Positions 27,895-55,354 of a stretch of DNA of 64,000 nucleotides are shown here, one piece after another. The translations under genes were made by a program, and so were the position numbers. Within the stretch, counting starts at the first letter, position 1, and each line of letters opens with the position of its first letter. The stretch spans positions 1 through 64,000 of IMG/VR virus record IMGVR_UViG_3300044568_003163; one strand, written 5' to 3'. The notes under the pieces are model-generated. The model was not told the DNA's origin. It did no database searches and saw only the letters and a program-made list of their open reading frames with translations.

Positions 27895-30854
<2,960 letters not shown>

Positions 30855-30855
<1 letters not shown>

Positions 30856-31470: not shown

Positions 31471-31899
31471 TTATTGAATTCTTTTAGTTTTGTCTATTAA
31501 TTCAGGAAAAAAGAAGGACACTTCAGTAAGTGCATTTTCATCTGAATCAGAACCATGTATTGCATTCGAGGCTATAGACGAGCCATACATACTACGGATA
31601 GTTCCTGGATTAGCTAATTTAGGGTCAGTATCACCTATCAAAGTTCTAAAATCTTCGATTGCATTTGTTTTTTGTAGTGCAATTGCAACAATCGGTCCAG
31701 AAGTCATGAATTTTATTAGGTCATCGTAGAAATCCTTAGATTTATGAACTGAATAAAATTCCGCAGCTTTATCAGGAGTCAGCATAGTAACTTTCATTCC
31801 TACGGTTTTGAAACCTTCAAAGCTAATTCGTTGTATTAATTGATCTGCCGATGCAAATACATCCGGCTTAATCATGGTCAATGTGTATGTTCCTATCAT
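31471..31899 (-). CDS. ndk: Nucleoside-diphosphate kinase
   Basis: TLTMIKPD, FMTSGPIVAI, PGTIRSMYG, NAIHGSDS (catalytic His). Confidence 0.97.
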   Translation of the reverse strand: MIGTYTLTMIKPDVFASADQLIQRISFEGFKTVGMKVTMLTPDKAAEFYSVHKSKDFYDDLIKFMTSGPIVAIALQKTNAIEDFRTLIGDTDPKLANPGTIRSMYGSSIASNAIHGSDSDENALTEVSFFFPELIDKTKRIQ

Positions 31900-31902
31900 G
31901 AA

Positions 31903-32394
31903 TTATTTATCTTCGGAAAGATAAATCTTGCTGTACCAATCGAGTTTTAATTTTTCAATGTTACCATATTTGATTCCACATTCGTCAAAGATGTGAAGAT
32001 GTCCTTGTTCTCGGTAATCTTCTATCCAATAAACATATTTGAATCCCGAATTAACTAAGATTTTTGTACACATCTTACATGGAGAAAGAGTTAAGAGGAT
32101 GATGTAATTCTTTGGATCGAATTCTCGGAACTTAGCAATCATATTAACTTCGGCATGAATGAATCCGCTTTCACCTGGAATTAGGGAATCCTCTTCAGTT
32201 CCTGTTACTTCATTTATTGGTGCACCTTTGTAGGAGCCATTATAGCCAAAAGAAGCTATTTTTGTAAAGTTTTTGTGCAATGCCATACATGCAACTTTTT
32301 TAGTTGATGCATTAGATAATGTAGCTATTTGCTGAATCATACCAGCAAAGGTATCAATTTTAAAGTCTATTCTTTCTTGTGTCATTATTTCCAA
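31903..32394 (-). CDS. dCMP deaminase
   Basis: FGYNG, IHAEVNMI, TLSPCKMCTKIL zinc-deaminase motifs. Confidence 0.9.
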   Translation of the reverse strand: MEIMTQERIDFKIDTFAGMIQQIATLSNASTKKVACMALHKNFTKIASFGYNGSYKGAPINEVTGTEEDSLIPGESGFIHAEVNMIAKFREFDPKNYIILLTLSPCKMCTKILVNSGFKYVYWIEDYREQGHLHIFDECGIKYGNIEKLKLDWYSKIYLSEDK

Positions 32395-36054: not shown

Positions 36055-36061
36055 ATCTATT

Positions 36062-36700: not shown

Positions 36701-36719
36701 TGTAGTTAATTTATTTAAA

Positions 36720-36777
36720 GTAAAAATAATCAAATTAATTGACAAGAAAAAATAAAGTGAGTAGAAGTTATTAACAA
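36720..36777 (-). promoter_or_regulatory. Early promoter cassette 2
   Basis: TGTTAATAA (36776-36768), 39 nt, TTGAT-TATTTTTAC. Confidence 0.65.
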
Positions 36778-36800
36778 AAAAGGAACTCAATAGAGTTCCT
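36776..36800 (-). terminator. Intrinsic terminator
   Basis: AGGAACTC-tatt-GAGTTCCT plus TTTTT running into cassette 2. Confidence 0.8.
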
Positions 36801-36829
36801 TAATGTGTGCTTCGATTTGTGTTTGTTAT

Positions 36830-37233: not shown

Positions 37234-38379
37234 TTATTTTTTATTCATTTCAAAATCGATCATTTGTTTGATGGTTTCGTGTAATGATATTGTAATTCCT
37301 TTCCATTCTGGATAATCAGTTTTAAATTTAGTCAAATCTGAAATATACCAAATATGGTCACCAATTCGATTGTCTTCTAGAACTGTGAAGTCGTTCCAAT
37401 CTTTATGTTCTGGATTTATTTCTCTTAAGATAGAATTTGCCGAATCGATTGCTTCTAGAATCGAAGTTGAATTTTCTCTACCACCACCTGCATTATAGAC
37501 TGCACCAGGTATAGGGTTGTTATGATATTCTAAGAACATACTTACTAAGTCATCGGAATGGATATTATCTCTAACTTGTTTTCCTTTATAACCAAAGATG
37601 TTGTAATGTTTGTTGTTGACAATACACTTAATCAAATAAGCAAGAAATCCATGAAGTTCTGCACCTTGATGATTTGGTCCGGTTAAACAACCACCTCGAA
37701 ATACAACCGTATTCATACCAAAATATCTGCCATATTCTTGAACCATAATATCAGCAGCTACTTTAGAAGCACCAAAGATTGAATGTTTTGTATGGTCAAT
37801 CGACATAGTTTCGTCTACTTCTATTTGACGAGCAGATAGATTCGAAAGAGCTTCATAACGAGTTTCTTGTTCAACGATGTTTAATCGATTAGGAGTATCA
37901 CCATAAACTTTATTAGTTGATGTGAATATGAATGTAGCAGTTGGACAATATAAACGAGTAAGTTCTAACAGGTTCATTGTACCTATTGCATTTACTGAGA
38001 AGTCAGTCAAAGGTTCTTTTGCTGCCCAATCATGTGAAGGTTGTGCTGCAGTATGTACGATCATTTGAATATCATAAACTTCATGAGATTTGCCGAATAT
38101 TGTAAGTTCGCTATCTTCTAAAGTAAGGCCTTTGAAAATTGTTTCTAATGTTGCATAATCTCGAATATCGATAGACAATGGATTAAAGTTTGTTCCATAA
38201 TCTAATTTCATTTTATTTTCTGATTCTTTCGTAGAAGCATCTTCACCAAAGAAATAAGCTCGCATATCATTATCGATACCAACAACATAATAACCTTCAT
38301 TAATAAGACGTTTAACAGTTTGAGAACCTATCAAACCTGAAGATCCTGTAACAATTGCAGTTTTAACTTTATTTTGCAT
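37234..38379 (-). CDS. NAD-dependent NDP-sugar epimerase/dehydratase (CDP-tyvelose 2-epimerase-like extended SDR)
   Basis: VTGSSGLIG, HTAAQPSHD, FTSTNKVYGD, SIFGASKVAAD (catalytic Tyr position is Phe), FRGGCLTGPNHQGAELHGFL, GYKGKQVRDNIH, RIGDHIWYISD. Confidence 0.85.
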   Translation of the reverse strand: MQNKVKTAIVTGSSGLIGSQTVKRLINEGYYVVGIDNDMRAYFFGEDASTKESENKMKLDYGTNFNPLSIDIRDYATLETIFKGLTLEDSELTIFGKSHEVYDIQMIVHTAAQPSHDWAAKEPLTDFSVNAIGTMNLLELTRLYCPTATFIFTSTNKVYGDTPNRLNIVEQETRYEALSNLSARQIEVDETMSIDHTKHSIFGASKVAADIMVQEYGRYFGMNTVVFRGGCLTGPNHQGAELHGFLAYLIKCIVNNKHYNIFGYKGKQVRDNIHSDDLVSMFLEYHNNPIPGAVYNAGGGRENSTSILEAIDSANSILREINPEHKDWNDFTVLEDNRIGDHIWYISDLTKFKTDYPEWKGITISLHETIKQMIDFEMNKK

Positions 38380-38941
38380 TTTTTATAATTGAGTTTTTAA
38401 TTAAGAGTTTTTCGATTTCTACTATTGATTGTTCAATAGATTTTACAGATGAATCAATTTCGATAAATCGATTTTTCCATTTACCAGAATCCGAATGATT
38501 TTTGTAATAGTCATAATACCAATCGAACGAATCTTTTTGTTTAATAAAGTCGTTTTGAGAATAGATGATTCGATCTTTTGGTTTTCGTTCTACGTATTTT
38601 TCGTATGTAGTTGAAAGATAAATTATGGCAAAATTATTATCAAGGAGTAAATCACTTAATGAATCATCTTCTTTGATTAGAGATTTTCTTTCAAAGAATT
38701 TTGAGTAAACTAATTCAGAAAGAAAAGAACGATCTAAGATGAAAGTTTCTTCAGGAAATGCAGAGTACATCATATTAGCCATCACATGAATTCCGTGATA
38801 GAATTCATGTAAGTTTTCAATACATTCAGGCATTTTGTCTTTTACTGACATTTGACGGAATCCGTATTTTTTAGAAAGTATTTCTGCAATCGAAGATTTT
38901 CCTGTTCGAGAAAGTCCTTCAAGTATAATTAGTTTTGCCAT
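38369..38941 (-). CDS. dNMP (thymidylate-kinase-like) kinase
   Basis: IILEGLSRTGKSS P-loop and ILDRSFLSELVYS motif. Confidence 0.8.
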   Translation of the reverse strand: MAKLIILEGLSRTGKSSIAEILSKKYGFRQMSVKDKMPECIENLHEFYHGIHVMANMMYSAFPEETFILDRSFLSELVYSKFFERKSLIKEDDSLSDLLLDNNFAIIYLSTTYEKYVERKPKDRIIYSQNDFIKQKDSFDWYYDYYKNHSDSGKWKNRFIEIDSSVKSIEQSIVEIEKLLIKNSIIKNAK

Positions 38942-38963: not shown

Positions 38964-40253
38964 TTATTTGGTTAAGCAAGTGCGAATATCATTTACAATT
39001 CTATCACATGCAGACTCATATGATTCGTGGTCATATCCTACTTTGTGACATAATTCTCGCATTTGAGTTTCGCCGATAGTGCCAATCGTATGTAATGCAG
39101 TTCTTAATTGATATGCAACATCTTTTACGTCGGGTTTGTGAGTATTAACAGAATCAATTTTCGTGAAGTAAGGATATTCAGCATGACCAGCTTTTATCAT
39201 TTTGTGCAGGTAGTTATTTACTCGAGGAAATACTAAAATGTTTTTTGCCATCATAGCTTCGCAATGAGTTACACCACCATGAACTTCAGTAACAAATAAA
39301 TTACAAGCAATATGGGTTTTGTTGATAAACCTTAAATAATCTTCTCGAGTAAATTTTTCGTTATTTGGCATTACTTCGACGTGACCTTTTGATAAATCAT
39401 TAATCAATTGTAATTGTTCATCAGTTACTTTACGAGTAGGATTTAACATTACAGCTCTGAAAGGTTTGTCGGTGATAGTAGATAAAATTCCAATTGCTTC
39501 GGCAAATGAATCGTAATTAGTGTAACGATTTGCAGTATCTGAAATTCGATTACCAAAGTAAATTGTAGGAATTTCAAATTTTTCATCGTTATGGTATTTT
39601 GCAATTTCTGCATAATGAGCACCTACACCCCATACTGACTGAGGAGCAAGTATTTCTCGAGTTTTAAATAGAATATCATAAGCTTCCATTGCTTCTACTC
39701 TACCAGCTTCACATTGAAATGCAGCAATATCAGATGCAATAAAAGATTCCATTTGTCTTTCGTAATAACGAATTTTCTGCGGAACTTTATTTGCAATAGG
39801 AGAATCTAAGAAATAATTTGTAGAAATGATTTTCACTTCTTTGTTTCCAATAGTTTCAAATGCAACTCGCCAATTTTTTGTTAATGTGTTTTCGTCATTA
39901 ATCATTACATCGACATGAGGAAATCTTACAAGATTTGTTTGATGGTAATCGAAGTTGAAATTGTAACGAGAGGTCACAGGAGAAATAGGAATAATGTCTT
40001 CGTAAATTTGAATTGATGAATGATATTTCTCATCAAATAATTCGTAAATGTCGATCACATCATCGCAATGACCTGCAGGTGGTAATTTTACAATGAAATG
40101 GAATTCGTTAGGATTTTGTTCTAATATGGTTGAAATTATACCAACCGCAATATTAGTACATGCATCGTTTCTTAATAACCATTGAGGATAACCATTTCGA
40201 TTAGTGAAATTAGAAACTTGAATTGCATAAAAGATTGTTGTTTTTTTATTCAT
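38964..40253 (-). CDS. GT-B fold glycosyltransferase (GT4 / T4 alpha-gt-like)
   Basis: IYFGNRIS, REDYLRFI, TEVHGGVTHCEAM (GT4-like E...E motif). Start moved to ATG 40253. Confidence 0.65.
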   Translation of the reverse strand: MNKKTTIFYAIQVSNFTNRNGYPQWLLRNDACTNIAVGIISTILEQNPNEFHFIVKLPPAGHCDDVIDIYELFDEKYHSSIQIYEDIIPISPVTSRYNFNFDYHQTNLVRFPHVDVMINDENTLTKNWRVAFETIGNKEVKIISTNYFLDSPIANKVPQKIRYYERQMESFIASDIAAFQCEAGRVEAMEAYDILFKTREILAPQSVWGVGAHYAEIAKYHNDEKFEIPTIYFGNRISDTANRYTNYDSFAEAIGILSTITDKPFRAVMLNPTRKVTDEQLQLINDLSKGHVEVMPNNEKFTREDYLRFINKTHIACNLFVTEVHGGVTHCEAMMAKNILVFPRVNNYLHKMIKAGHAEYPYFTKIDSVNTHKPDVKDVAYQLRTALHTIGTIGETQMRELCHKVGYDHESYESACDRIVNDIRTCLTK

Positions 40254-40257
40254 TAAA

Positions 40258-40983
40258 TTACATTTTAGAATAGTTAATAGTAGAGTGTGGTAGGTTTTGT
40301 ATGTAATCAAAATCCTTTTTGAAAACGTGAGCAGAAACTACAGACGAAGAAAATTTACCTGGTTCAACTTCTAGTTTTTCTGCTAATTCGCAAGTAAATC
40401 GACCCCATAAGTACATATCAAGCTTAAGGACTTGTGCCATATTTTGAGATCGCATATGAACATGAACATTTAGCTTTTCATCTCGGATAAAGAAAGTAGC
40501 AGAATCGGTACATGGAAATTCTAAAGATTCGTTTTTATCTAAAAGATTAAGGTCATCTTTATCGAGAATCATAATGACTGCTCTTCGAGTATCAGGTTTA
40601 TCTCGCAATTCCTTTTCGATTGTAGGTAATTGTGATAAAATACGAGGACCATAGAAGGTATTGAAGTTTTCTGGAAGTTGGTCAGACTTTGGCTTTTCCA
40701 TAAACTTAGTGACGTTTGGATATTTGTCGATAATTTCGGTTGAGTCTGTGCAACCGTTCATCATCCAACGATAAAAGGTATCAGCATAATCATAGTCTAA
40801 TTTACCAATCAACTCGTTCGTAAATTGATAACTGGTTAAATCGAGTACATCATAACTCAATCCTGTAATTTCATGTACTTCACCAATGCGAGAAGTAGTT
40901 TGAAATTCAGGATTGTCTATAATATGCTGAGAAGTTTGTAAGAAAGCTTCTTCAAAAGTTTCAAATGTAGAATATTTGTGCAT
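40258..40983 (-). CDS. Thymidylate-synthase-fold enzyme with dCMP-type specificity residue (dCMP hydroxymethylase-like)
   Basis: YGPRI, PDTRRAVI, FPCT (catalytic Cys), HMRSQNMAQVLKLD with Asp at the E. coli TS Asn177-equivalent position, SAHVF. Confidence 0.8.
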   Translation of the reverse strand: MHKYSTFETFEEAFLQTSQHIIDNPEFQTTSRIGEVHEITGLSYDVLDLTSYQFTNELIGKLDYDYADTFYRWMMNGCTDSTEIIDKYPNVTKFMEKPKSDQLPENFNTFYGPRILSQLPTIEKELRDKPDTRRAVIMILDKDDLNLLDKNESLEFPCTDSATFFIRDEKLNVHVHMRSQNMAQVLKLDMYLWGRFTCELAEKLEVEPGKFSSSVVSAHVFKKDFDYIQNLPHSTINYSKM

Positions 40984-41015: not shown

Positions 41016-41369
41016 CTATTTTGTATCAAGTAATTTTACTTTAGCAACACAAAGTTTTTCTTTGATTTTATCAGTTTTGATTTTACCAAATCTAGAGAAG
41101 ACCATTCGGGTCATATTAGGATTGATTCTATCCTTAATGATATTATCTAGTTCCTCACCTTTAATATTTGAATAAGTTCTCAATTCAAATCGATCTTCTT
41201 CAATGTGAGTTAACATAATTGAACCGTTCATAAAGAAAAGCCTTTTTGCAGTTTCGAAATCTTGCTTCAAAATGAAGTCGTTCATAAACTCGTTTTTCAT
41301 AGTCTTATTTAGTGTTAAGACTACCAATGATTCGTTAATGAACTCATCGTATTTTTTAAATGTGCTCAT
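41016..41369 (-). CDS. Putative internal head protein
   Basis: MSTFKKYDEFINES N-terminus. Confidence 0.55.
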   Translation of the reverse strand: MSTFKKYDEFINESLVVLTLNKTMKNEFMNDFILKQDFETAKRLFFMNGSIMLTHIEEDRFELRTYSNIKGEELDNIIKDRINPNMTRMVFSRFGKIKTDKIKEKLCVAKVKLLDTK

Positions 41370-41854
41370 TACTTATTTAATTTTACCTCTATGATATTTT
41401 TAGGTCCTTTAGAAATAGTGGCCTTAGGGAATTCATGTTTAATATATTTAGAATAGAGATTAAGTCTAGCTATGTTTGTAGTTTCTCCTTTCTTTTTTGC
41501 TGGTGTAAATACGAGAATATCTACTTCGGGATGTGTACTTAAGTCTTTCTTAATTACATCTACGACGGTTGCCATTACTTTAAATAGTTCTCCCTTATTT
41601 GTTACAATATCATCTCTTTCAATGTCTGGATCTTCATCATCCGGAACATAGAATCTCACAGATAAAACGTTGTTTGCACCTTCATAATCGTCTATGTCGT
41701 CGTATTGTAGTTCTACCGTATATGGATAGCTTGGTGTTTCAAATCCATATATTCTTGCATTGCCATAATCACCATAAAAATCAGGATGATATGCCTTTGA
41801 ACTGGAATCTCCTATTTCGTTTAAGAATTCGTCGTATGATGGTAAATTTTTCAC
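41369..41854 (-). CDS. Putative internal head protein (GTG start)
   Basis: MKNLPSYDEFLNE N-terminus; TNKGELFKVMATVVDVI domain. Confidence 0.6.
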   Translation of the reverse strand: MKNLPSYDEFLNEIGDSSSKAYHPDFYGDYGNARIYGFETPSYPYTVELQYDDIDDYEGANNVLSVRFYVPDDEDPDIERDDIVTNKGELFKVMATVVDVIKKDLSTHPEVDILVFTPAKKKGETTNIARLNLYSKYIKHEFPKATISKGPKNIIEVKLNK

Positions 41855-42216
41855 TAGTCTTGTTTTGGTTTTTCGCCTTTACCTTTTAACCAATCGGCAA
41901 CATCAGAATCCGTAGTTTCGTATCCTTTAGTTTTTCTAATGAAAGCATTTAAACGAGCATAACCCCATGCAGTATATGCTGCAGGACCTCTACCAATTTT
42001 TTGAATGTTAGGATTAACAGCACCCCAATTAGTTTCAGCTGCACCATAACCTCTTTTAAAGAGCATAGTTAATGCATCTTCGATTTGAGCAGGAGATCCA
42101 CCAATAGCTTTTTTAGTTTTTGGATCGTTTGCAAGTTCCTTTATTCTATCATCTACTTTGCTATCTTCATTTAATGCAAAATCGACGAATTCGTCGTAAG
42201 TTATTAGATTTTTCAC
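41854..42216 (-). CDS. Putative internal head protein (GTG start)
   Basis: MKNLITYDEFVDFALNE N-terminus; RGYGAA...AWGYARLNAFI motif. Confidence 0.6.
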   Translation of the reverse strand: MKNLITYDEFVDFALNEDSKVDDRIKELANDPKTKKAIGGSPAQIEDALTMLFKRGYGAAETNWGAVNPNIQKIGRGPAAYTAWGYARLNAFIRKTKGYETTDSDVADWLKGKGEKPKQD

Positions 42217-42224
42217 TTATTGAA

Positions 42225-43034
42225 TTATTTTGGTGTCCAAATCTTTTGAACTTTTTTATTTATATATTCAATGAGTTCGCTGAAATTAGGATCTAACGCC
42301 TGAGAGTCGAATGATTCTTTATTTGTAGAAAACGAAATCTTACCGTAAACTTCTCGAGTATCTAAATATTGAGATATTCCAGCTTTTCGCAAAGAATCTG
42401 AAAATATAACATACTCATATCTACCAGAATTATCGTCATATATAATATTAGGTAAAACTTCGTTCTTAACAAAGTATGTACAATGTACTACTGGAACTTG
42501 GATTAGTCCTTTATATTTTTGATATAATAATGTAGAGTACATATCATCATTTTCGAAATATCCATTGGTATCTATTGATGAATGGAAATTTGAGTACATA
42601 GAGTTAGAATCTACTGAATGCAATAAAGGTGCTACTACTGGTAAATTAGTGGCCATTAGAGAATTGATAGTATGAGGTTTGATTATATTATCACAATCTG
42701 CGATAAAATAATCTGCCTTTTCGCTCATGGCAAATTGAATAGAGTCTTGTCTAATTGCTCCTAATATTTTAAATCGATGAGTATTCCAATCGTGATTTTC
42801 TACTAACTTTAGGCTTTCATCTATCGATGAATCATCAAATACCATTTTCCATTTCCATTTCCACTTATTGTACCAATCAAATAAAACATTAGCAGTATCG
42901 TCGTTATTGTCGTTTGTTCGAATATAAAATACCGAGTCCCATCCAAGAGCAGTCTGAGCTAACATACTATCTAAATACAATGGTAGTATATGGGCTTTTG
43001 ATTTTGCGATAATAGGAATTACTAATCTACTCAT
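42225..43034 (-). CDS. GT-A glycosyltransferase resembling the N-terminal domain of procollagen galactosyltransferase COLGALT1
   Basis: IIAKSKAHILPLYL, IRTNDNNDDTANVLFDW, IRQDSI, ADYFIADCDNII (DxD), LPVVAPLL, YSNFH, GYF, VPVVHCTYFV occur in the same order as recalled COLGALT1 motifs. Confidence 0.75.
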   Translation of the reverse strand: MSRLVIPIIAKSKAHILPLYLDSMLAQTALGWDSVFYIRTNDNNDDTANVLFDWYNKWKWKWKMVFDDSSIDESLKLVENHDWNTHRFKILGAIRQDSIQFAMSEKADYFIADCDNIIKPHTINSLMATNLPVVAPLLHSVDSNSMYSNFHSSIDTNGYFENDDMYSTLLYQKYKGLIQVPVVHCTYFVKNEVLPNIIYDDNSGRYEYVIFSDSLRKAGISQYLDTREVYGKISFSTNKESFDSQALDPNFSELIEYINKKVQKIWTPK

Positions 43035-43450
43035 ATATGTTCTAGAATTTCAAGGTGAGCTTTAATCATTCTAGGTCTAGCCATTTCAAACGGCATAAAA
43101 CCAGCCCAATCAACTTCTGCAGCTTGTAATTGAGACTTAGGTATGATTTCGGATTGTAAACCTATTTGGTCTAATGATTTAATAGGTACAATATAATAAG
43201 TTAACTTCTTCCAGGGTTTTCCTGTTTTAGTTTTGATATAAAATAGCTCCATTTCTGGACCAATCAAATTTCGAGGAACATCAATACCAATTTCCTCTTT
43301 AGTTTCTCTGATTGCTGCTTCTATATTAGTTTCACCGGCATCAACATGACCTTTAGGGATCGAATAGGTTCCATACCATCTTCCATTAGTTGGATGAACT
43401 AATAAAATTTGGTCTTTATAGATTATTGCTAATCCTGACGAATGTTCCAT
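43031..43450 (-). CDS. Nudix hydrolase
   Basis: GHVDAGETNIEAAIRETKEEIG Nudix box. Confidence 0.92.
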   Translation of the reverse strand: MEHSSGLAIIYKDQILLVHPTNGRWYGTYSIPKGHVDAGETNIEAAIRETKEEIGIDVPRNLIGPEMELFYIKTKTGKPWKKLTYYIVPIKSLDQIGLQSEIIPKSQLQAAEVDWAGFMPFEMARPRMIKAHLEILEHI

Positions 43451-45366
43451 TATTGTTTGATTAAATTTACGATGTCACCATAAGTAACAATTTTAACTCC
43501 TAGCTTTTTAGCTTTTGCAGTTTTAGAAGTAGCAGAATCGATATCGTCAGTAATTAGATATGTTGAATCGGCAGATAAAGAAGTTTGAACATAACCATGA
43601 GGAGCAATTAATTTAACGAATTCCTCTTTAGTTTTAAATCCAAATTCTTTAGGAGAACCAGTCATTTCGAATTTAATTGAATTAGCATCGATTACTGTTT
43701 TAACTTCAGTTTCTATTATATATCCGTTAGCTTTTATCAGGTCGATTAAACGAATTACGGATTGATATTCAGGAGATGATTGATTATAGAAAGGTGCATA
43801 TGCCTCTCTAGATTTTCCTGAGAAATCTGGAGTTCCACCATCGAATAGTTTAGCAATTTGTTCGGATGTAGAGAATCCTACATTTTTAAAAGCTAATGAA
43901 GCAATGATTCGAGGCATTGTAATTGCTTTACGTTTTTCAAATGATTGTAAAATAATTTCTAATGCTCGACCTTTCTTAAAGTAACCTGACTTAATAAGAT
44001 TAGCTTCGTTGAATTTTGTTTTGTCGAATAAATCAAACATGGTTTTAATACCTGCATTATAGAGATTTTCAATAGTAGCACCACCAACATTATCTAATTC
44101 GAATGTACCAATTCCTACTGATAATCGACTAATCAATTGTTCTTTACAATTTGGATTTGTACAAAGTAAATGAACACCATCAATTTCAATTTTACATTCT
44201 AGAGTAGAACATTGAGCAGGTATGTGATCGTTAATGTCTTTAACAAATACTGGAGTGATTACGTGTCTTACGATAGGTATAATATCACCTGATTTTACGA
44301 TTACAACCTTAGCACCAGGAAATAATCCTTTGGTTTGAATATTTCCAAGATTATGTAATGCAACTCTAGAAACAGTAGTTCCATCTAAATCGATAGGTTC
44401 AAGTATACCAACTGGTTTGAATTCACCGGATTGTCCTAAGTTCCATTCGATTCTATTGATATATGTTACTGCTTCGGTTGGTGGAAATTTGATAGCCATT
44501 GCCCATTTAGGGTGATGGTCAGTTTCACCAATTTTGTTTCTTAATTCATGAGGAAATTTAATTACAAAACCATCAAGTCCATATTCACAATCATGAATTC
44601 GGTAATAATGAAACATATTGAAAATAGTTTCGAATTGAGAAGGAAAGAATGTATGAACAAAATCTGGAATAAGAAATCCATTACGTTTAAGTATTTCGAA
44701 TTGTTTAGTCCCATGTTCATAAGCATTATTTTCGTGGATTCGATATTCAAAAGCAATAAAATCAAAATCATTGATTACGCTTAAGTCTTTAATTTCATCT
44801 CGACCTAAGATACCGGCAACAAAGTTACGAGGATTTTTGTAATCCATCGAATATTTTTCGTTGAATAATTTGGTTTTGATAATTACTTCACCACGAATTT
44901 CGATTAAACCTGGAATGTTGATTTCGTTAGGAACGATATGCATTATTTTAGAAGTAATATCAGTTCCATGAGTTCCATTACCTCGAGTAGATGCAGTAAT
45001 TAGCTTACCGTTTTTGTAAGTTAAGTTACATGAAGAACCATCAAATTTAGGTTCAGCTTCTAATTGTAAAGTTTTTTGTAATAATGTACCAGCTGAATTT
45101 GTAGATTTTTCGATCCAATCGTTGAATTTTTGAATCGGTAAAGATTTATCTTCTAAATCGTTTACTTGTGTTTTTTGTAAAGATAACATTGGAGATAGGT
45201 GCTGATTTTCTTTTGAAGTATCATCAGATCCTACTATGTTGATTACGTTTGAACCTTCAGCTCTTAGTAAATCTTCTAATCTATCGAATGCGGTATCGGT
45301 CATTAAAGGATTACCATCGTAGTAAGCTTTCTTAGCGTCTAAATAAAGTTTTTCGTTTGTGTTCAT
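43450..45366 (-). CDS. ligA: NAD+-dependent DNA ligase
   Basis: YYDGNPLMTDTAFD, HLSPMLSL, EPKFDG (adenylated Lys), STRGNG, EIRGE, DGFVIK, WAMAIKFP, KSGDIIP, Cys4 Zn finger, C-terminal BRCT. Confidence 0.97.
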   Translation of the reverse strand: MNTNEKLYLDAKKAYYDGNPLMTDTAFDRLEDLLRAEGSNVINIVGSDDTSKENQHLSPMLSLQKTQVNDLEDKSLPIQKFNDWIEKSTNSAGTLLQKTLQLEAEPKFDGSSCNLTYKNGKLITASTRGNGTHGTDITSKIMHIVPNEINIPGLIEIRGEVIIKTKLFNEKYSMDYKNPRNFVAGILGRDEIKDLSVINDFDFIAFEYRIHENNAYEHGTKQFEILKRNGFLIPDFVHTFFPSQFETIFNMFHYYRIHDCEYGLDGFVIKFPHELRNKIGETDHHPKWAMAIKFPPTEAVTYINRIEWNLGQSGEFKPVGILEPIDLDGTTVSRVALHNLGNIQTKGLFPGAKVVIVKSGDIIPIVRHVITPVFVKDINDHIPAQCSTLECKIEIDGVHLLCTNPNCKEQLISRLSVGIGTFELDNVGGATIENLYNAGIKTMFDLFDKTKFNEANLIKSGYFKKGRALEIILQSFEKRKAITMPRIIASLAFKNVGFSTSEQIAKLFDGGTPDFSGKSREAYAPFYNQSSPEYQSVIRLIDLIKANGYIIETEVKTVIDANSIKFEMTGSPKEFGFKTKEEFVKLIAPHGYVQTSLSADSTYLITDDIDSATSKTAKAKKLGVKIVTYGDIVNLIKQ

Positions 45367-45451: not shown

Positions 45452-45895
45452 TTACTCGTTTCTTGCTATGTCTCTTGACACATCTCTAGATTTAATTGTT
45501 TCTCGTTTATCATATTCTTTTTTACCTTTAGCTAGAAAGATTTCCATTTTGAAAAGTCCTCTTTCATTTTGAAATATTTTATAAGGTACAATTGAGTGGC
45601 CTTTGATGAGGTCCTTTTGTAGCTTTTTAAGTTCTTGTTTTCGCAGCAACAATTTGCGGTTGCAATCCGGTTCGTGACTATTAGGCGAATTCTTTGCAAC
45701 TGGAATATGAAGGCCTCTGACGTAAAGCTCATCATTCTCAAAAATACAATAAGTATCAGTAAGTCCAGCTAATCCTAGTCGAATAGATTTTACTTCACTG
45801 CCTTTTAATTGTATACCTGCAATTTCTGACCTCAATAAGTGATAATCAAATTTAGCTTTTCGATTGATGACGTTTACGTCTTTGACTTTTTTCAT
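45452..45895 (-). CDS. smpB: SsrA-binding protein SmpB
   Basis: NRKAKFDYHLL, AGIQLKGSEVKSIR, ELYVRGLHI, RKLLLRKQE, LAKGKKEYDKRETIK. Confidence 0.97.
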   Translation of the reverse strand: MKKVKDVNVINRKAKFDYHLLRSEIAGIQLKGSEVKSIRLGLAGLTDTYCIFENDELYVRGLHIPVAKNSPNSHEPDCNRKLLLRKQELKKLQKDLIKGHSIVPYKIFQNERGLFKMEIFLAKGKKEYDKRETIKSRDVSRDIARNE

Positions 45896-46368
45896 TATTT
45901 TAAAAATTTTCTAATTGATGAATTTAATCTCTCTAGATGTTCTTCATTTTGCAAACCAGCAAATTTCGTAACATTATCAGATATAAAAGGAATACAAATC
46001 TTTTTATTAAATACTTCTGCACCTATCCATTCAAGAATAGTGTCTAATTGAGTTATTCCTAAAATATTACCAAATGAGGTATTTGATGTACCTATTAGCA
46101 ATATGTTGGTTCCTTTAAGTGTTGATGGATATCCGGAATTATCTATCAATTGCTTAAACATATAAGGAAATGATCCGTTCCATTCAGGAACTATCATAAT
46201 GATATGTGTGAAATCTTTCATGTTAGGAATATCATCAGTAGCATTTGCTAAAGTAATAATACTTGTCGCACCTTTAAATATTTCGTATTGTATGAAAGAC
46301 TCACAACCTAAGGACAGCTTATAATTTAAGCCGTCCTTTGATGATTGTGTGAGTATGAGTATTTTCAT
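45895..46368 (-). CDS. NADPH-dependent FMN reductase (flavodoxin-like)
   Basis: IVPEWNGSFPYMFKQLID motif; TSNTSFGNILGITQL. Confidence 0.8.
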   Translation of the reverse strand: MKILILTQSSKDGLNYKLSLGCESFIQYEIFKGATSIITLANATDDIPNMKDFTHIIMIVPEWNGSFPYMFKQLIDNSGYPSTLKGTNILLIGTSNTSFGNILGITQLDTILEWIGAEVFNKKICIPFISDNVTKFAGLQNEEHLERLNSSIRKFLK

Positions 46369-47378
46369 TATTTTTTATCAGCACCACCGATGTTCATCAT
46401 AACGGATTGTCCACTACCCATCATATAAGTAGGTAAGGCACCATCCCATTTTTGAATCCATTCTAATTGAATAATCTTAGGATTAGTCGAGATAGAGTTA
46501 CCTTTGATTTGTAACGCTTTAGCTTCACCTTCAGCTTTTTCGATTGCAATGTTTTTATCGATTTGAGCTTGTTTTAAGGCTTCATCTTTTTGACGAGTAA
46601 TTTGTACCATTGTAAGTACTTTTTGCTCTTCTAATTTCTTTTGATTAATGGAAGCTTCATATTGTTTGTTGTAGAATACCTCTCTAATTTGAGCAACATC
46701 AACAATTATACGATTAGCCGCTAATTCTTTTTGTAGAGCTGCTTGCATTTTCGCTTGAATTTCTGCTCTTTTATCAGAGTAACAATCAATTGGTGTATAT
46801 CGAGAAACCGTTAATGGCATAATAGATTTGATAGCCGGTCTAATGATATTTTCTTCAATCCAATGATATTTACCGGTAGCATCATCTGTACCAGAAGAAA
46901 TATTTGAATAAATCCAAGAAGCTTCTTTAGGATCGATATGCCAGTTAATAGAAACATCGAATCCCATTTTGATACCATCAGAGGTTGGAGCCCAAATAGC
47001 ATCATCAGCCTGTTTAGCACCTTCTCCTTCAGTACCTGATAATGTATATACCCAAACAGTTTTGTCCATCAATTGAACTTGATTATAAGGAGCTACTAAG
47101 TGCCAACCAGTAGTTAGCTCATCTGGATCTACTCCAGCAGGTGTAACTACAACTCCTACTTCTTGTGCATCAATTTTGTATAATGTCATAGACAATAATA
47201 CTGAAACTGCGAAAACGATTGTACTAATTAATAGTGTAAGTTTTCCTGCAGGAAATTGCATGACTTCGTCATAATTTTTAGGATCAGCCTCATGTTTGGC
47301 GTTGATTCTAGATTGGATCGTTCCAATAATTCCATAAATAAGTCCTAATGCGGACGCAATAATTAAAAATGTTAACAT
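46368..47378 (-). CDS. SPFH/band-7 membrane protein
   Basis: Two N-terminal TM helices, KIDAQEVGVVV...GWHLVAPY, C-terminal AEGEAKA...IQKWDGALP. Confidence 0.9.
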   Translation of the reverse strand: MLTFLIIASALGLIYGIIGTIQSRINAKHEADPKNYDEVMQFPAGKLTLLISTIVFAVSVLLSMTLYKIDAQEVGVVVTPAGVDPDELTTGWHLVAPYNQVQLMDKTVWVYTLSGTEGEGAKQADDAIWAPTSDGIKMGFDVSINWHIDPKEASWIYSNISSGTDDATGKYHWIEENIIRPAIKSIMPLTVSRYTPIDCYSDKRAEIQAKMQAALQKELAANRIIVDVAQIREVFYNKQYEASINQKKLEEQKVLTMVQITRQKDEALKQAQIDKNIAIEKAEGEAKALQIKGNSISTNPKIIQLEWIQKWDGALPTYMMGSGQSVMMNIGGADKK

Positions 47379-52372: not shown

Positions 52373-55354
52373 ATGCCAACAGCAAATTACCCTAATAATC
52401 AAGATTATCGTTTAAATAAGACTCGTCCTCTTACATGGAAAGAAATGGACGATATGTTCAGAAAACCAAATATTTGGATTGGAGATTTTAGTTACGTTCA
52501 AGGAATGGTCGTGATGTGGGATGATTCAGTTCCACCAGTTAATAATGGAGATGATGGAACTTTATCTTTTTGGTTATGTGATTCCGATCACGTATCTTCC
52601 AATACTAATACTCCAGGAATATTAAATAGTCCATGGAGAAGAATAGGTGGATTAAGTGTTCCAGGACCTACAGGAGAATCGGGTGGTCCTATAGGACCTA
52701 CTGGAATGACCGGTGCTACTGGTAGAACTGGAATGACAGGTGCAACAGGTTCTACTGGAATGACTGGTGCGGTTGGACAAACTGGTGCTACTGGACAAAC
52801 TGGAATGACTGGTGCTGTTGGACCTACCGGAGTTGGTTTACCCGGATCTAAAGGTGATACTGGAAATATTGGTGCTACAGGAATGACTGGGTTAGTAGGA
52901 CCAACTGGAGCAGGAGTAACTGGTGCTACTGGACAAACTGGACAAACTGGACCTACCGGTTTCAACGGACAAACTGGTCCTACAGGAATGACTGGTGCAG
53001 GAGAAACCGGTGCTACAGGAATGACAGGAATGACAGGTGCTACTGGAATGACAGGACCTATAGGACCTACTGGTGCAAATGGAATCCCGATGGGTAAACC
53101 ATCTGATGCATTAGATATGTATTACGATGATGATCCGTCTTCACAAGGTTGTAATCCTGGTGATCCGCTCAAACTATCGTTTGATGTAGTACGAACTGGA
53201 GTTACTTCACTTGCATATGTAGTAGATAATTCCGGTATTTCGACTGCAGGAGGTACAAAAATATTAATACAAAAAGAAGGAAATTATTTTATATCGGTAA
53301 ATGTTAATATAAAAATTCTAACTCCGGTCGACGGTAGAGCCGAAGTTTCTTTAAATTTATATTATGATGATACCTCTGGAAGCTATACTAAATTCGACGG
53401 ATTTCAAGGAAATGTTATATTAGATGCAGAAGGTTTAACTCCAACTGGAACATTAAAAGATTCTATTATGATTCAAGGAATTTTTAATGTAGATGCTAGT
53501 TGGATTTCTTCAAACAGAAAAATATATGCCGTATTAGAAAATGCTGCAGCAGGAATTTCTCTTTCATCCATCGTCGTATCACCTATTTCTACTTCATTAT
53601 CTATCATCTCGTTAGAAGGTGGAATTGGTGCTACTGGAGCAGGAGTTGCTGGACAAACTGGTGCTACTGGTATGACTGGATTAGTTGGACCAACTGGAGC
53701 AGGTCAAACTGGTGCTACTGGACAAACTGGTGCTACCGGAGAAACTGGAATGACAGGTGCTACTGGAATGACTGGTCCTACTGGTGCTGGACAAACTGGT
53801 GCTACCGGAATGACTGGTCCTACTGGTCTAGGGTACGATCTTACTTCTTCAATATCTGCTACTGCTGGATTAGGGGTAAAAGTTTTTACCGTAAATAAAG
53901 ATGCATCTCTTTCTGCATTTTCCATTGGAAACCGAGTAAGAGTAAGTTCATCTTTCGTAATTTGGATGGAGGGAGAGATAACATCATATGCAGGAAATAC
54001 CTTAATTGTGAATGTTGATAAAGTAGTTGGTAGTGGTGCTTCTGCGAGTAGTTGGGATATCGACATTGCTGGACTTCCTGGACCTACTGGAATGACTGGA
54101 ATGACTGGTGCTACTGGAAGAACTGGTAGTACAGGAATGACTGGTGCTACTGGAAGAACTGGTAGTACAGGAATGACTGGAGCTCAAGGTCCTATCGGAC
54201 CAGCAGGACCATTTGGTGCTACTGGTATGACTGGATTAGTTGGACCAACTGGATCAGGCACTACATTTATTCATGAAACTGCTACTTTCGTAGATCCTAA
54301 CGGTAGCAACAGTACTGGTGCAGTAGGAGATAAACAAAAACCATTTTTGACGATAGAAGAAGCAATAGGTCAAGCTCGTTCACGAGCAAACGAACAAGGC
54401 GGACCATTTACTATCATCGTATATCCGGGTATTTATGAGGAAAACAAGCAATGGAATTTTGAAAACGACGAAGGAACTATTAAATTTATCGGTCAAGTTT
54501 ATATAGAATTTGATAACCCAAACCCGGTAGATTATTTTATCAAAATGAGTAATTCGTATATTAATTTCGTTGGAGATGACCGAGGGACGAATAATTTCCA
54601 AATTGGCGGTACTTGTAATACTGGAACATATTTAACCATATCTAGTAAATTCGGTACTAATGTGTATTTATTCGATGTTCGAAATACTAAACTTAAACTA
54701 TCAAATATTACAATAGATACAGGATTTTTAGGAAAATTTGGAGTAGATTGGAAATACCCCGGTGGTGGTAGTAAAGTAGATATTGATAATTGTAGAATGA
54801 GATCTATTATACATCCTAATATCGAGGTTTCTGCCGACGGCGCAGTTGATGGTCTTTCTAGATTACCAGATATATTAATTAGAGATTCAATTCTAGCATC
54901 GGCTTTTGGACCTAATATTGGATATTATGCATTTACTAATGGTTTAGAATCTGAAGCTACTTTATTGATTGATAATAGCACAATCTATCAAGATCCTACC
55001 TATGGAGGTTTAGGTAAATTAACACCTGGATTTCCAACTCCAGTAGGAGGAAAATTACCTCACGTAGACAGTTTCATATATTCAACGATGAATCTGGATA
55101 ACCAATTAAGGTTGATATTTTCTGGGACGAAATTCCATATGAACAAATGGTCTCCACCAGCAGAAGGAAGTGGTGGACCTGAAGCTTGCGTACATTTTGA
55201 TAATTCTGGAAATGATTTCAAACATGACACGATGTCAACTTACACTAATACTCGAAATTTTTTAGGAGCCAGCATCTGGACTCATGTAGTTGACCATATA
55301 ACGGAGTTAAAAGGTAGTACGAAATCTCCAATTGAATATATGAACATACTTTAA
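52373..55354 (+). CDS. Collagen-like fibre protein II (G-X-T repeats, C1q-like domain, C-terminal parallel beta-helix)
   Basis: N-terminus paralogous to fibre I ([26 protein letters not shown]); collagen runs; [11 protein letters not shown]...[10 protein letters not shown]...[10 protein letters not shown] beta-helix cap motif. Confidence 0.85.

What the first reader, a model, noticed from the sequence alone, without database searches (positions are those of the whole stretch)
42225..43034. Phage COLGALT1-like glycosyltransferase in a genome with collagen fibres: possible virion collagen-glycosylation system
Seen: the motif order IIAKSKAHILPLYL / RTNDNNDDTANVLFDW / IRQDSI / ADYFIADCDN / VVAPLL / YSNFH / GYF / VPVVHCTYFV parallels my recollection of human COLGALT1 N-domain VLARNAAHSLPHYL / ATDHNMDNTTGMLREW / LRQAAL / ADYILFVDADN / VVAPML / YSNFW / GYY / VPMVHSTFLI. 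The same window encodes two G-X-T collagen/C1q fibres and a sugar epimerase. Established: collagen glycosyltransferases are known in animals and mimiviruses. Inference: a bacteriophage that glycosylates its own collagen fibres, on Thr because Lys is nearly absent from the triplets, for stability, shielding or host recognition. Alternative: second-sugar addition on modified DNA.
Basis: partly seen in the sequence, partly recalled or inferred. Interest (0 to 1): 0.87.

Follow-up and report, generated by a model that had tools for sequence, protein, structure and literature searches.

The report
Collagen-family glycosyltransferase inside a DNA-sugar module
A jumbo phage carries a small sugar-transferring enzyme whose relatives usually sit beside collagen-like fibre genes, but here it lies inside a gene cluster that decorates the phage's DNA with sugars, so it most likely adds a further sugar to DNA rather than to fibres.

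Summary
ORF 42225-43034 (-), 269 aa, is a high-confidence GT-A fold. Its closest solved relatives are human COLGALT1 (phmmer E 1.7e-19; Foldseek TM 0.81), LH3 and mimivirus R699. The match is to the non-catalytic GT1/AC accessory domains, not to the collagen-galactosylating GT25 domain. The phage protein keeps the GT1 donor-site residues (W83, D113, D115, E207) and six further acidic positions that COLGALT1 has lost, so it is probably active.

G-X-T collagen genes lie within 10 kb in 27 of 80 bacterial and 14 of 75 viral loci (0 of 68 controls), usually with an SgtA-like GT2+TPR initiator.

The window's own clade differs. It has no SgtA-like partner. The gene sits in a tightly packed block: ligase-NUDIX-GT-...-TS homologue (D169N/N177D, the 5-hydroxy-dCMP synthase signature)-GT-B-kinase-epimerase. 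This matches the published DLP3/RB69/RL38J1 glycosyl-5-hydroxycytosine clusters. Related phages shuffle the gene order, yet the GT stays inside the module. Other relatives lack it altogether.

Best reading (about 0.5): an accessory transferase that extends the sugar on 5-hydroxycytosine DNA. Main rival (about 0.3): Thr-glycan synthesis on the phage's collagen fibres. No biochemistry exists for either.

The parts
42225..43034 (-). Target: stand-alone GT-A glycosyltransferase, 269 aa, homologous to the COLGALT1 GT1 and LH3 AC domains. It has an invariant DXD (D113/D115) and conserved W83, H184 and E207.
43031..43450 (-). NUDIX hydrolase whose stop overlaps the GT start by 4 nt. It may be a dCTP- or NDP-sugar-directed pyrophosphatase, but its substrate is not established. 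It travels with the GT in L004.
43450..45366 (-). NAD-dependent DNA ligase, the first gene of the co-directional block. It is the syntenic anchor in related jumbo phages.
41854..42216 (-). 120-aa ORF of unknown function between the GT and the TS homologue.
41369..41854 (-). 161-aa ORF with a weak, sub-threshold DUF6934 match.
41016..41369 (-). 117-aa basic ORF that is conserved immediately upstream of the TS homologue in related phages, whether or not they carry the GT.
40258..40983 (-). Thymidylate-synthase homologue predicted to be a 5-hydroxy-dCMP synthase. C146, R166 and S167 are kept; D169 is replaced by N and N177 by D (E. coli ThyA numbering).
38964..40310 (-). p448: a GT-B fold (GT4/GT20-like) glycosyltransferase in the kinase-GT-TS slot, predicted to be the base-proximal DNA sugar transferase. 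Its true start is probably the ATG at 40253.
38369..38941 (-). dTMP-kinase-like nucleotide kinase, predicted to act as a 5hodCMP kinase.
37234..38379 (-). SDR nucleotide-sugar epimerase/dehydratase, closest to CDP-tyvelose 2-epimerase. It probably supplies the donor sugar.
36780..36801 (-). Terminator-like hairpin (9-bp stem plus a T-run) after the last gene of the block. This is a consensus match only.
31471..32394 (-). Nucleoside-diphosphate kinase (31471-31899) and dCMP deaminase (31903-32394). They complete the route to the modified triphosphate and the balancing of pyrimidine pools.
52373..55354 (+). Collagen-like G-X-T tail-fibre protein of 993 aa, 9.3 kb from the GT. It is the candidate acceptor under the rival explanation.
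27895..30855 (-). Collagen-like G-X-T tail-fibre protein of 986 aa, 11.4 kb from the GT at the edge of the baseplate/tail module. It is the candidate acceptor under the rival explanation.

Best explanation
The ORF encodes an active, metal- and UDP-sugar-dependent GT-A glycosyltransferase that serves as an optional extra step in this jumbo phage's DNA hypermodification pathway.

Proposed pathway:
1. dCMP is converted to 5-hydroxy-dCMP by the thymidylate-synthase homologue. The dCMP may be supplied partly by the co-translated NUDIX enzyme.
2. The adjacent kinase and the phage NDK phosphorylate it, and it is incorporated into DNA.
3. The GT-B enzyme p448 puts the first sugar on the 5-hydroxyl. 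The donor is made with the TyvE-like epimerase.
4. The target GT-A adds a further sugar to that DNA-linked sugar.

The enzyme belongs to a family that elsewhere partners SgtA-like initiators in cassettes next to G-X-T collagen-like genes. In this phage clade it appears to have been recruited from glycan extension on protein to glycan extension on DNA.

Shown here: the fold, the conserved donor site, the signature of the TS homologue, the GT-B fold of p448, and conserved linkage despite shuffled gene order. Inferred: the catalytic activity, DNA-linked sugar as the acceptor, the order of sugar additions and the identity of the sugars.
For: (1) Operon. Ten co-directional genes run from ligase to the 122-aa ORF with gaps of at most 35 nt. 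NUDIX and GT overlap by 4 nt. One terminator-like hairpin follows the block.

(2) Nature of the module. The TS homologue matches PDB 9IQU at E 1e-72 and is about 51% identical to Straboviridae homologues. It carries D169N and N177D. D169N is the diagnostic residue of experimentally verified 5hodCMP synthases (PMC13326640).

(3) p448 is a GT-B fold. Its PDB neighbours (sucrose-phosphate synthase, MshA, BshA 3mbo, 7qsg, 7fg9/8x3q, BGluT) are the ones the paper lists for the DLP3, RB69 and RL38J1 DNA glycosyltransferases. It lies between the kinase and the TS homologue exactly as in those clusters.

(4) Linkage survives rearrangement:
- window and L004: ligase-NUDIX-GT-..-TS-p448-kinase
- 226-kb contig: ligase-GT-114aa-TS
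- L010: TS-p448-GT-kinase-epimerase
- L009: GT4-GT-TS-kinase-..-SIS isomerase-NTP-transferase, a different sugar route and a different GT-B

(5) The TS-linked GTs form one clade with 100/100 support.

(6) The GT is accessory. L090/91, L093, L094, L095 and L097/98 keep TS-p448-kinase without it. This resembles the variable number of sugars in known systems.

(7) The window clade lacks the SgtA-like partner that accompanies the family in collagen cassettes: 0 of 4 loci, against 47 of 156 elsewhere.

(8) Catalytic competence is plausible. DXD, W83, H184 and E207 are invariant or nearly so, and six further conserved acidic positions are ones that non-catalytic COLGALT1 GT1 has lost.
Against: No DNA glycosyltransferase of this GT-A family has been described, and the known 5hoC sugar transferases are all GT-B.

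The family-level signal points to collagen-like proteins, not DNA. The closest cellular homologues, at about 50% identity, are themselves collagen-linked.

G-X-T collagen fibres are encoded 7-11 kb away in the window, L009 and L010.

The protein is acidic (pI 5.5), which gives no hint of DNA binding, although p448 is acidic too.

The same GT, about 59% identical, sits beside two different sugar-supply routes (window versus L009). That is awkward for an enzyme that must recognise a specific acceptor sugar.

The three gene arrangements may descend from one ancestral insertion followed by local shuffling, which would weaken the linkage argument.

There are no chemical data on the DNA of any member of this clade, and no cultured relative in INPHARED.
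Confidence: 0.5

Rival explanations
1. One reading: the GT builds or extends O-glycans on threonines of the phage's own G-X-T collagen-like tail fibres. It would act in the host cytoplasm before assembly, as Bcl-type spore collagens are glycosylated in Bacillota. Its place in the DNA-modification block would then reflect shared nucleotide-sugar supply or ancestry.
For: The family is associated with G-X-T collagen genes within 10 kb in 14 of 75 viral loci against 0 of 68 ligase-anchored controls (Fisher p = 8e-5, about five independent viral lineages). In bacteria the figure is 27 of 80 loci, with a median distance of 2.2 kb and 12 loci within 2 kb.

Same-strand adjacency occurs in Paenibacillus L196 and in L182. 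Full cassettes of collagen, SgtA-like GT2+TPR and this family occur in L196, L213, L221, L080 and L086. Fusions with GT25, GT2, GT8 or GT11 sit next to collagen genes in L235, L011 and L053.

SgtA is a proven Thr-O-GlcNAc transferase for GPT repeats (PMC7157674).

The window, L009 and L010 all encode G-X-T fibres within 7-11 kb.
Against: No SgtA-like initiator, GT25 or GT4 partner is found in the 64-kb window or in any window-clade locus. None surfaced for these contigs in an IMG/VR scan, though that is a weak negative.

The fibres are 7-11 kb away, separated by unrelated DNA-metabolism genes. That is farther than in any bacterial cassette.

Collagen genes stay in the same neighbourhood in relatives that lack the GT (L094, L095), so their proximity is a property of the clade, not of the GT.

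The GT tracks the TS homologue through three gene orders.
Confidence: 0.3
2. The protein is not a catalyst. It would be a UDP-sugar- and metal-binding accessory or scaffold subunit, like COLGALT1 GT1 and the AC domains of LH3 and R699, that stabilises or regulates a neighbouring true transferase (p448 here, SgtA-like enzymes elsewhere).
For: Its three closest solved relatives are all non-catalytic accessory domains that pair with a catalytic GT. COLGALT1 GT1 also keeps DXD and binds UDP-Gal and Ca2+ purely for stability. The family almost always occurs beside, or fused to, other GTs.
Against: These are stand-alone proteins with an invariant DXD and H184 and six extra conserved acidic positions that the inactive human domain has lost. 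The family is large and strongly conserved: 469 representatives at E <= 1e-10. The next-closest folds are active GT2-type enzymes: SpsA, RmlT, TarP and WrtF.
Confidence: 0.08
3. The GT acts on some other acceptor: a host envelope polysaccharide or teichoic acid, another virion protein, or a nucleotide or small molecule.
For: After the collagen-enzyme domains, the nearest folds are wall-teichoic-acid and polysaccharide GT2 enzymes such as TarP, RmlT, SpsA and WrtF. Most family loci (48 of 63 distinct viral and assembly-derived loci) show neither a TS homologue nor collagen within 10 kb. The Paenibacillus massiliensis copy stands alone among unrelated genes.
Against: The protein shows no membrane or lipid-carrier features. 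Nothing in the window points to envelope modification. Both context signals that do exist, the DNA module locally and collagen cassettes family-wide, point elsewhere.
Confidence: 0.1

Closest known systems
Human COLGALT1/GLT25D1, N-terminal GT1 domain (PDB 9EVJ/9EVK, 8ZGC, 9U7H)
   Same: Best sequence match (E 1.7e-19) and best structural match (TMq 0.81). Both are GT-A Rossmann folds. The donor-site residues W135, D166, D168 and D265 correspond to W83, D113, D115 and E207.
   Different: GT1 is non-catalytic and is fused to the catalytic GT25 domain. The phage protein is a stand-alone 269-aa domain with no GT25 part. It keeps six conserved acidic positions that GT1 has lost. Its genomic context is DNA modification, not hydroxylysine chemistry.
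AC (accessory) domains of LH3/PLOD3 and of mimivirus R699
   Same: Same GT-A subfamily. Sequence matches fall on LH3 residues 364-510 and R699 residues 291-455. Foldseek gives E 5e-17 and 1e-13.
   Different: Those domains do not bind cofactor or catalyse a reaction, and they sit beside a catalytic GT domain in the same chain. The phage protein has an intact DXD and stands alone.
Glycosyl-5-hydroxycytosine DNA hypermodification clusters of phages DLP3, RB69 and RL38J1 (Lee et al., NAR 2026, PMC13326640)
   Same: TS homologue with D169N, an adjacent nucleotide kinase, a GT-B transferase in the slot between them, nucleotide-sugar supply genes, and a variable number of extra transferases.
   Different: The host phages here are uncultured jumbo phages of 200-300 kb with about 31% GC, not Straboviridae or Pootjesviridae. 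A NUDIX gene stands where those phages have a MazG-type dCTPase. The sugar gene is TyvE-like rather than an arabinose route. The extra transferase is GT-A of the COLGALT1-GT1 family, whereas all described ones are GT-B.
SgtA-BclA3 system of Clostridioides difficile (Thr-O-GlcNAc on GPT collagen repeats; PMC7157674)
   Same: Homologues of the target lie in cassettes with a G-X-T collagen-like gene and an SgtA-like GT-A+TPR gene of about 350 aa, in Bacillota, Negativicutes and phages.
   Different: SgtA itself is the initiator and belongs to a different GT2 subfamily with TPR repeats. The enzyme that extends the BclA3 glycan was not identified in that study. The window has no SgtA-like gene.
T4 alpha- and beta-glucosyltransferases (hmC DNA glucosylation)
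   Same: Phage enzymes that transfer sugar from UDP-sugar to a modified cytosine in DNA after replication, which protects against restriction (established knowledge; PMC13216743 listed).
   Different: They are GT-B fold, act on 5-hydroxymethylcytosine, and show no sequence or structural relationship to the target.

Membership tests
COLGALT/GLT25D collagen galactosyltransferases (CAZy GT25) | Catalytic GT25 (GT2) domain with the Glu-Asp-Asp Mn2+ site | tested here: not met
   The match covers only the GT1 region (chain residues 13-252 of 520). Pfam gives no PF01755 hit. The protein is 269 aa with a single domain.
COLGALT/GLT25D collagen galactosyltransferases (CAZy GT25) | Two-domain GT1+GT2 architecture | tested here: not met
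   Stand-alone single GT-A domain. GT25 does occur fused to, or beside, family members in other genomes (L011, L086, L235), but not in the window.
COLGALT/GLT25D collagen galactosyltransferases (CAZy GT25) | Acceptor is hydroxylysine in collagen triplets | not testable with these tools
   This needs biochemistry. The window's collagen triplets are dominated by Thr at the Y position with few Lys, and no lysyl hydroxylase was seen among the annotated ORFs.
GT1/AC-type GT-A domain family (COLGALT1 GT1, LH3 AC, R699 AC) | GT-A fold closest to these domains | tested here: met
   Foldseek top 22 PDB hits are COLGALT1, LH3 and R699. Top BFVD hits are giant-virus PLOD-like proteins.
GT1/AC-type GT-A domain family (COLGALT1 GT1, LH3 AC, R699 AC) | GT1 donor-site residues (Trp135, Asp166-x-Asp168, Asp265) | tested here: met
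   These align to W83, D113, D115 and E207, which are invariant or nearly so across 55 family members.
GT1/AC-type GT-A domain family (COLGALT1 GT1, LH3 AC, R699 AC) | Non-catalytic accessory role | tested here: inconclusive
   The protein stands alone, and six further conserved acidic positions are lost in COLGALT1. This argues for activity.
Glycosyl-5-hydroxycytosine DNA hypermodification cluster (DLP3/RB69/RL38J1 type) | TS homologue with D169N (5hodCMP synthase signature) and the catalytic Cys | tested here: met
   Alignment with E. coli ThyA: C146, R166 and S167 are kept, D169 is N and N177 is D, in the window and in L004, L009, L010 and Bp7 (criterion).
Glycosyl-5-hydroxycytosine DNA hypermodification cluster (DLP3/RB69/RL38J1 type) | Gene order nucleotide kinase - glycosyltransferase - TS homologue | tested here: met
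   Kinase-like 38369-38941, GT-B p448 38964-40310, TS homologue 40258-40983 (compare Table 1).
Glycosyl-5-hydroxycytosine DNA hypermodification cluster (DLP3/RB69/RL38J1 type) | dCTP-depleting pyrophosphatase | tested here: inconclusive
   No MazG-type dCTPase was seen. A NUDIX hydrolase is translationally coupled to the GT, but its substrate is unknown (best NCBIfam hits are all far below cut-off).
Glycosyl-5-hydroxycytosine DNA hypermodification cluster (DLP3/RB69/RL38J1 type) | The target itself transfers sugar to DNA-linked glycan | not testable with these tools
   Only genomic linkage supports this. The described extra transferases are GT-B, and this protein is GT-A.
Glycosyl-5-hydroxycytosine DNA hypermodification cluster (DLP3/RB69/RL38J1 type) | Virion DNA contains glycosylated 5hoC | not testable with these tools
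   The phage is uncultured, and INPHARED holds no relative.
Bcl/SgtA-type Thr-O-glycosylation cassette for G-X-T collagen-like proteins | Collagen-like G-X-T gene adjacent to the GT | tested here: inconclusive
   In the window the fibres are 9.3 and 11.4 kb away, with unrelated genes between. Homologues elsewhere are often within 2 kb.
Bcl/SgtA-type Thr-O-glycosylation cassette for G-X-T collagen-like proteins | SgtA-like GT-A+TPR initiating transferase in the cassette | tested here: not met
   tblastn finds none in the window or in L004, L009 or L010. It is present in 29 of 76 viral and 18 of 80 bacterial family loci.

The most novel reading that the evidence does not exclude
An undescribed, widespread family of stand-alone GT-A enzymes is the active prokaryotic and viral counterpart of the inactive GT1/AC accessory domains of the animal collagen-glycosylating enzymes COLGALT1 and LH3. 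Its ancestral job would be extending O-glycans on G-X-T collagen-like proteins, alongside SgtA-like initiators and often GT25 enzymes, in bacteria, phages and giant viruses. One jumbo-phage clade would then have redeployed it to extend sugars on 5-hydroxycytosine in DNA. That would make it the first GT-A DNA-glycan transferase in phages, and the first enzyme family shared between collagen glycosylation and DNA hypermodification. The co-occurrence of this family with GT25 next to collagen genes (L086, L011, L235) would also point to a pre-metazoan origin of the COLGALT1 domain pair.
Probability: 0.35. Interest if true: 0.85.

Novelty: new variant of a known kind. Interest (0 to 1): 0.7.

Why it matters
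If the DNA reading is right, glycosyl-5-hydroxycytosine hypermodification, described only in 2026, extends to uncultured jumbo phages and uses a transferase fold not previously seen in these pathways. That adds a new enzyme class for glyco-diversifying DNA and for evading restriction.

If the fibre reading is right, it would be a phage-encoded collagen Thr-glycosylation system.

In either case the comparative result stands on its own. A large bacterial, phage and giant-virus family homologous to the non-catalytic domain of human COLGALT1 is genomically tied to G-X-T collagen-like genes and SgtA-like transferases. This gives a concrete candidate for the unidentified enzymes that extend Bcl-type spore-collagen glycans. 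It also bears on how the animal collagen-glycosylation machinery was assembled.

Tried and rejected
- Pfam, PHROGs and NCBIfam scans of the target gave nothing at the thresholds used. tblastn of the target and of p448 against INPHARED, and megablast of 12 kb of the window, found nothing. There is therefore no cultured relative to lean on.
- A literature search for PDB codes 9IQU/9IQC found no paper.
- Net charge and pI were tried as a discriminator for DNA binding. This was rejected because the predicted DNA GT-B is acidic too.
- Promoter scanning found fewer sites than shuffled sequence gives, so it was uninformative. Only one terminator-like hairpin was used, with caution.
- Active-site geometry could not be measured because model coordinates are not exposed.
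- The C1q claim for the fibres was tested by Pfam and by PDB sequence search and was not detected.
- An IMG/VR scan with an SgtA-like alignment did not return the window-clade contigs, but the list was truncated at 80 of 171, so the negative is weak.
- The idea that the protein is a bona fide COLGALT-type collagen galactosyltransferase was rejected, because it has no GT25 domain.
- Treating L069-L086 as many independent collagen-linked lineages was rejected, because their neighbouring GT2-TPR genes are 70-79% identical and they form one phage group.
Full report
**1. The observation**

ORF 42225-43034 on the minus strand encodes 269 aa. phmmer against all PDB chains returns only collagen-modifying enzymes as significant hits:
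- four COLGALT1 constructs at E about 2e-19, aligning query residues 3-234;
- LH3/PLOD3 at E 5e-6, aligned to LH3 residues 364-510;
- mimivirus R699 at E 0.008, aligned to R699 residues 291-455.

An AlphaFold2 model built on 55 homologues is very confident (pLDDT 95.2, pTM 0.92). Foldseek ranks COLGALT1 first (E 5e-23, TMq 0.81), then LH3 (TMq 0.74) and R699 (TMq 0.61). Generic GT2-type GT-A enzymes follow at E about 1e-9: SpsA, RmlT, TarP and WrtF. In the viral structure library the best hits are giant-virus PLOD-like proteins.

The two collagen ORFs are real. They lie at 52373-55354 (+) and 27895-30855 (-), carry G-X-T triplets, and match Pfam Collagen and PHROG tail-fibre families. The epimerase at 37234-38379 is real as well. 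A C1q domain could not be detected. The window is the first 64 kb of a 294-kb IMG/VR contig, so this is an uncultured jumbo phage.

**2. What the similarity does and does not mean**

The matched part of COLGALT1 is the N-terminal GT1 domain. The 2025 crystal-structure paper shows that catalysis resides in GT2, the GT25 domain. GT1 binds Ca2+ and UDP-Gal only for folding stability, and it is most similar to the inactive AC domain of LH3 (PMC12003778). The R699 region matched is also its accessory domain (PMC12279948). The homology is therefore genuine, but it carries no information about a collagen acceptor.

Chain numbering is offset by 27 from the numbering in that paper. With that offset, the GT1 donor-site residues Trp135, Asp166, Asp168 and Asp265 align with phage W83, D113, D115 and E207. 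All four are invariant or nearly so in the family.

Of eleven acidic positions conserved in the family, COLGALT1 keeps five. It has replaced the other six: D67 to R, D82 to H, D155 to T, E192 to A, D213 to F and D225 to C. The paper states that GT1 lacks the acidic residues needed for catalysis. My inference is that the stand-alone phage and bacterial proteins are active enzymes and that the animal domain is a degenerate derivative. I could not check the geometry because model coordinates are not exposed.

**3. The local context is a DNA hypermodification module**

From the NAD-ligase (43450-45366) down to a 122-aa ORF (36830-37198), ten genes are co-directional with gaps of at most 35 nt. NUDIX and the GT overlap by 4 nt. 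The only strong terminator-like hairpin on that strand follows the block.

The 241-aa thymidylate-synthase homologue matches PDB 9IQU at E 1e-72. It is about 51% identical to homologues in Acinetobacter and Dhakavirus T4-like phages, where it occupies the gene-42/beta-gt slot next to a kinase. Lee et al. (NAR 2026, PMC13326640) showed that these homologues make 5-hydroxy-dCMP and that D169N is diagnostic. Aligned with E. coli ThyA, the window protein keeps C146, R166 and S167 and has D169 replaced by N and N177 by D. So do its orthologues in L004, L009 and L010.

Immediately downstream lies a 448-aa protein with no Pfam or PDB sequence match. Its model (pLDDT 88.7) is a GT-B fold. Its PDB neighbours are sucrose-phosphate synthase, MshA, BshA 3mbo, ManT 7qsg, 7fg9/8x3q and BGluT. 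The NAR paper lists the same structures for the DNA arabinosyl- and hexosyl-transferases of DLP3, RB69 and RL38J1.

Next come a dTMP-kinase-like protein and an SDR closest to CDP-tyvelose 2-epimerase. The order kinase, GT-B, TS homologue reproduces DLP3 gp78-79-80, RB69 gp45-46:47-48 and RL38J1 gp214-215-216. NDK, dCMP deaminase, guanylate kinase and DHFR are nearby.

**4. Linkage within the clade**

Close homologues of the target (58-62% identical) always lie inside this module, but at different places:
- L004 (210 kb): ligase-NUDIX-GT-p117-TS-p448-...-kinase.
- A 226-kb JGI contig: ligase-GT-114aa-TS-446aa-kinase-epimerase.
- L010: TS-p448-GT-kinase-epimerase.
- L009: ATP-ligase-GT4-GT-TS-kinase-542aa-SIS isomerase-NTP-transferase. 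This module has a different GT-B and a DLP3/RB69-like sugar route.

These TS-linked GTs form a single clade with 100/100 support. The reciprocal search from p448 shows that several related jumbo phages carry ligase-p117-TS-p448-kinase-epimerase without the GT: L090/91, L093, L094, L095 and L097/98. Their contigs, up to 254 kb, were not among the GT hits.

The GT is therefore an accessory, mobile component that stays with the 5hoC module. That behaviour fits an optional extra sugar-adding step. Known systems likewise differ in the number of sugars and transferases.

**5. The family-wide context is G-X-T collagen**

The family is large. An exhaustive HMMER search finds 469 representatives at E <= 1e-10, many of them domains of multi-GT proteins.

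Outside the window clade, no viral homologue has a TS homologue within 10 kb. However, 14 of 75 have a G-X-T collagen ORF within that distance, against 0 of 68 viral loci anchored on the NAD-ligase (Fisher p = 8e-5). The phage loci L069-L086 count as one lineage, because their neighbouring GT2-TPR genes are 70-79% identical. That leaves about five independent viral lineages, including giant-virus MAGs.

Examples of the arrangements:
- L086: collagen-GT4-GT25-GT25-GT2/TPR-GT.
- L080: collagen-...-sulfotransferase-APS kinase-Anp1-like-GT2/TPR-GT.
- L053: a collagen gene immediately followed by a 955-aa protein combining GT8, GT2 and this domain.
- L011: an 823-aa fusion of GT25, this domain and GT11.

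In bacterial genomes, 27 of 80 loci have G-X-T runs within 10 kb. The phyla include Chlamydiia, Babeliales/Dependentiae, Paenibacillus and Bacillus, Negativicutes, Methylobacter and Bradyrhizobium. The median distance is 2.2 kb, and 12 loci are within 2 kb. Examples:
- Same-strand GT-collagen pairs in Paenibacillus L196 and in L182.
- Collagen-ManC-GT-GT2/TPR-GT4 in Bacillus L213.
- Collagen-GT2/TPR-GT in Veillonellaceae L221.
- In Bradyrhizobium L235, a 1913-aa collagen gene with 543 triplets next to a 1882-aa protein combining TPR, GT2, this domain, GDSL and GT25.

The recurrent GT2+TPR partner has the architecture of C. difficile SgtA, the proven initiating Thr-O-GlcNAc transferase for the GPT repeats of BclA3. 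The enzymes that extend that glycan were not found in that study (PMC7157674). SgtA-like genes accompany the family in 29 of 76 viral and 18 of 80 bacterial loci, in 0 of 71 controls, and in 0 of 4 window-clade loci. The COLGALT1 paper found GT1 homologues only in animals and giant viruses, so this prokaryotic and phage family appears to be undescribed.

**6. Synthesis**

Two independent lines of context disagree, and both are real.

Family-wide, the enzyme belongs to collagen-linked glycosylation cassettes. There it is most simply read as a glycan-extending partner of an SgtA-like initiator.

In the window's clade it has lost that partner. It sits beside a different initiator, a GT-B DNA glycosyltransferase, together with the 5hodCMP synthase, and it tracks them through rearrangements. 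The collagen fibres are 7-11 kb away, and they remain in place in relatives that lack the GT.

The most economical account is that a sugar-on-sugar transferase was recruited from protein glycans to DNA glycans. I put this at about 0.5. A non-catalytic accessory role (0.08) and other acceptors (0.1) remain possible. Nothing here is biochemical, and the tests listed under next steps would separate the readings cleanly.

**7. Novelty and verdict**

Glycosylated 5hoC clusters and Thr-glycosylated Bcl collagens are both known kinds of system. What is new:
- the GT-A, COLGALT1-GT1-like transferase inside a 5hoC module;
- the extension of such modules to uncultured jumbo phages;
- the family-level tie between GT1-like enzymes and G-X-T collagen genes.

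I classify the finding as a new variant of a known kind, with interest 0.7.

Noticed in passing
window 45452-45895 (-): Phage-encoded SmpB, the tmRNA-binding protein (Pfam E 4.7e-43). It is conserved at the same place in the related 210-kb contig L004.
   Followed up: partly
window 35665-36790 (-), 56504-57463 (-), 59034-59810 (-): DNA-repair genes surround the modification module: an HhH-GPD glycosylase, a weak Pyr_excise-like protein, UvdE endonuclease and an RNase_T-type exonuclease. The HhH-GPD gene is syntenic in all relatives. It might act on unmodified or mis-modified cytosine.
   Followed up: no
window 31471-32394 (-), 47861-48349 (-), 55351-55824 (-): A broad nucleotide-metabolism set: NDK, dCMP deaminase, guanylate kinase and DHFR. 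This fits a phage that rebuilds its pyrimidine pool.
   Followed up: partly
window 34529-35071 (-), 45895-46368 (-), 46368-47378 (-): A ferritin-like protein, an FMN-reductase/flavodoxin-like protein and an SPFH/Band-7 protein. The flavin protein sits near a TS homologue whose relatives were examined for bound flavin in the 2026 paper (method headings).
   Followed up: no
window 38964-40310 (-): The listed TTG start of p448 is probably too far upstream. Homologues align only from residue 19-26. The ATG at residue 20 (coordinate 40253) leaves a 4-nt gap after the stop of the TS homologue.
   Followed up: partly
window 52373-55354 (+): This collagen fibre gene is the only large plus-strand gene in the 64-kb window. 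It lies among DNA-metabolism genes rather than in the baseplate/tail block at 3-31 kb.
   Followed up: no
L080 5601-7222: A phage collagen/GT cassette contains a sulfotransferase and an APS-kinase-like gene, which suggests sulfated glycans on a phage collagen-like protein.
   Followed up: no
L011 9173-11644; L235 6767-12415; L053 5787-8654: Multi-GT fusion proteins join the target-family domain to GT25, GT2, GT8 or GT11 next to very long G-X-T collagen genes. They occur in giant-virus MAGs and in Bradyrhizobium, where the collagen has 543 triplets. GT25 together with this domain are the two parts of animal COLGALT1.
   Followed up: partly
L009 13664-15890: A window-clade relative carries an SIS isomerase and an NTP-transferase, a DLP3/RB69-like arabinose-type route. 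The window instead has a TyvE-like epimerase. The DNA sugar therefore probably differs between close relatives.
   Followed up: partly
L004 13216-18757; L010 13752-14396: Relatives add a hexapeptide transferase, a PIG-L deacetylase, a second dehydratase (L004) or a DegT aminotransferase fragment (L010) to the module. These hint at amino-sugar chemistry.
   Followed up: no
L007 and L008: Two IMG/VR contigs from the same sample, 129 kb and 294 kb, are identical across the fetched 20.8 kb around the GT at the same contig coordinates. They are probably redundant assemblies of one phage.
   Followed up: no
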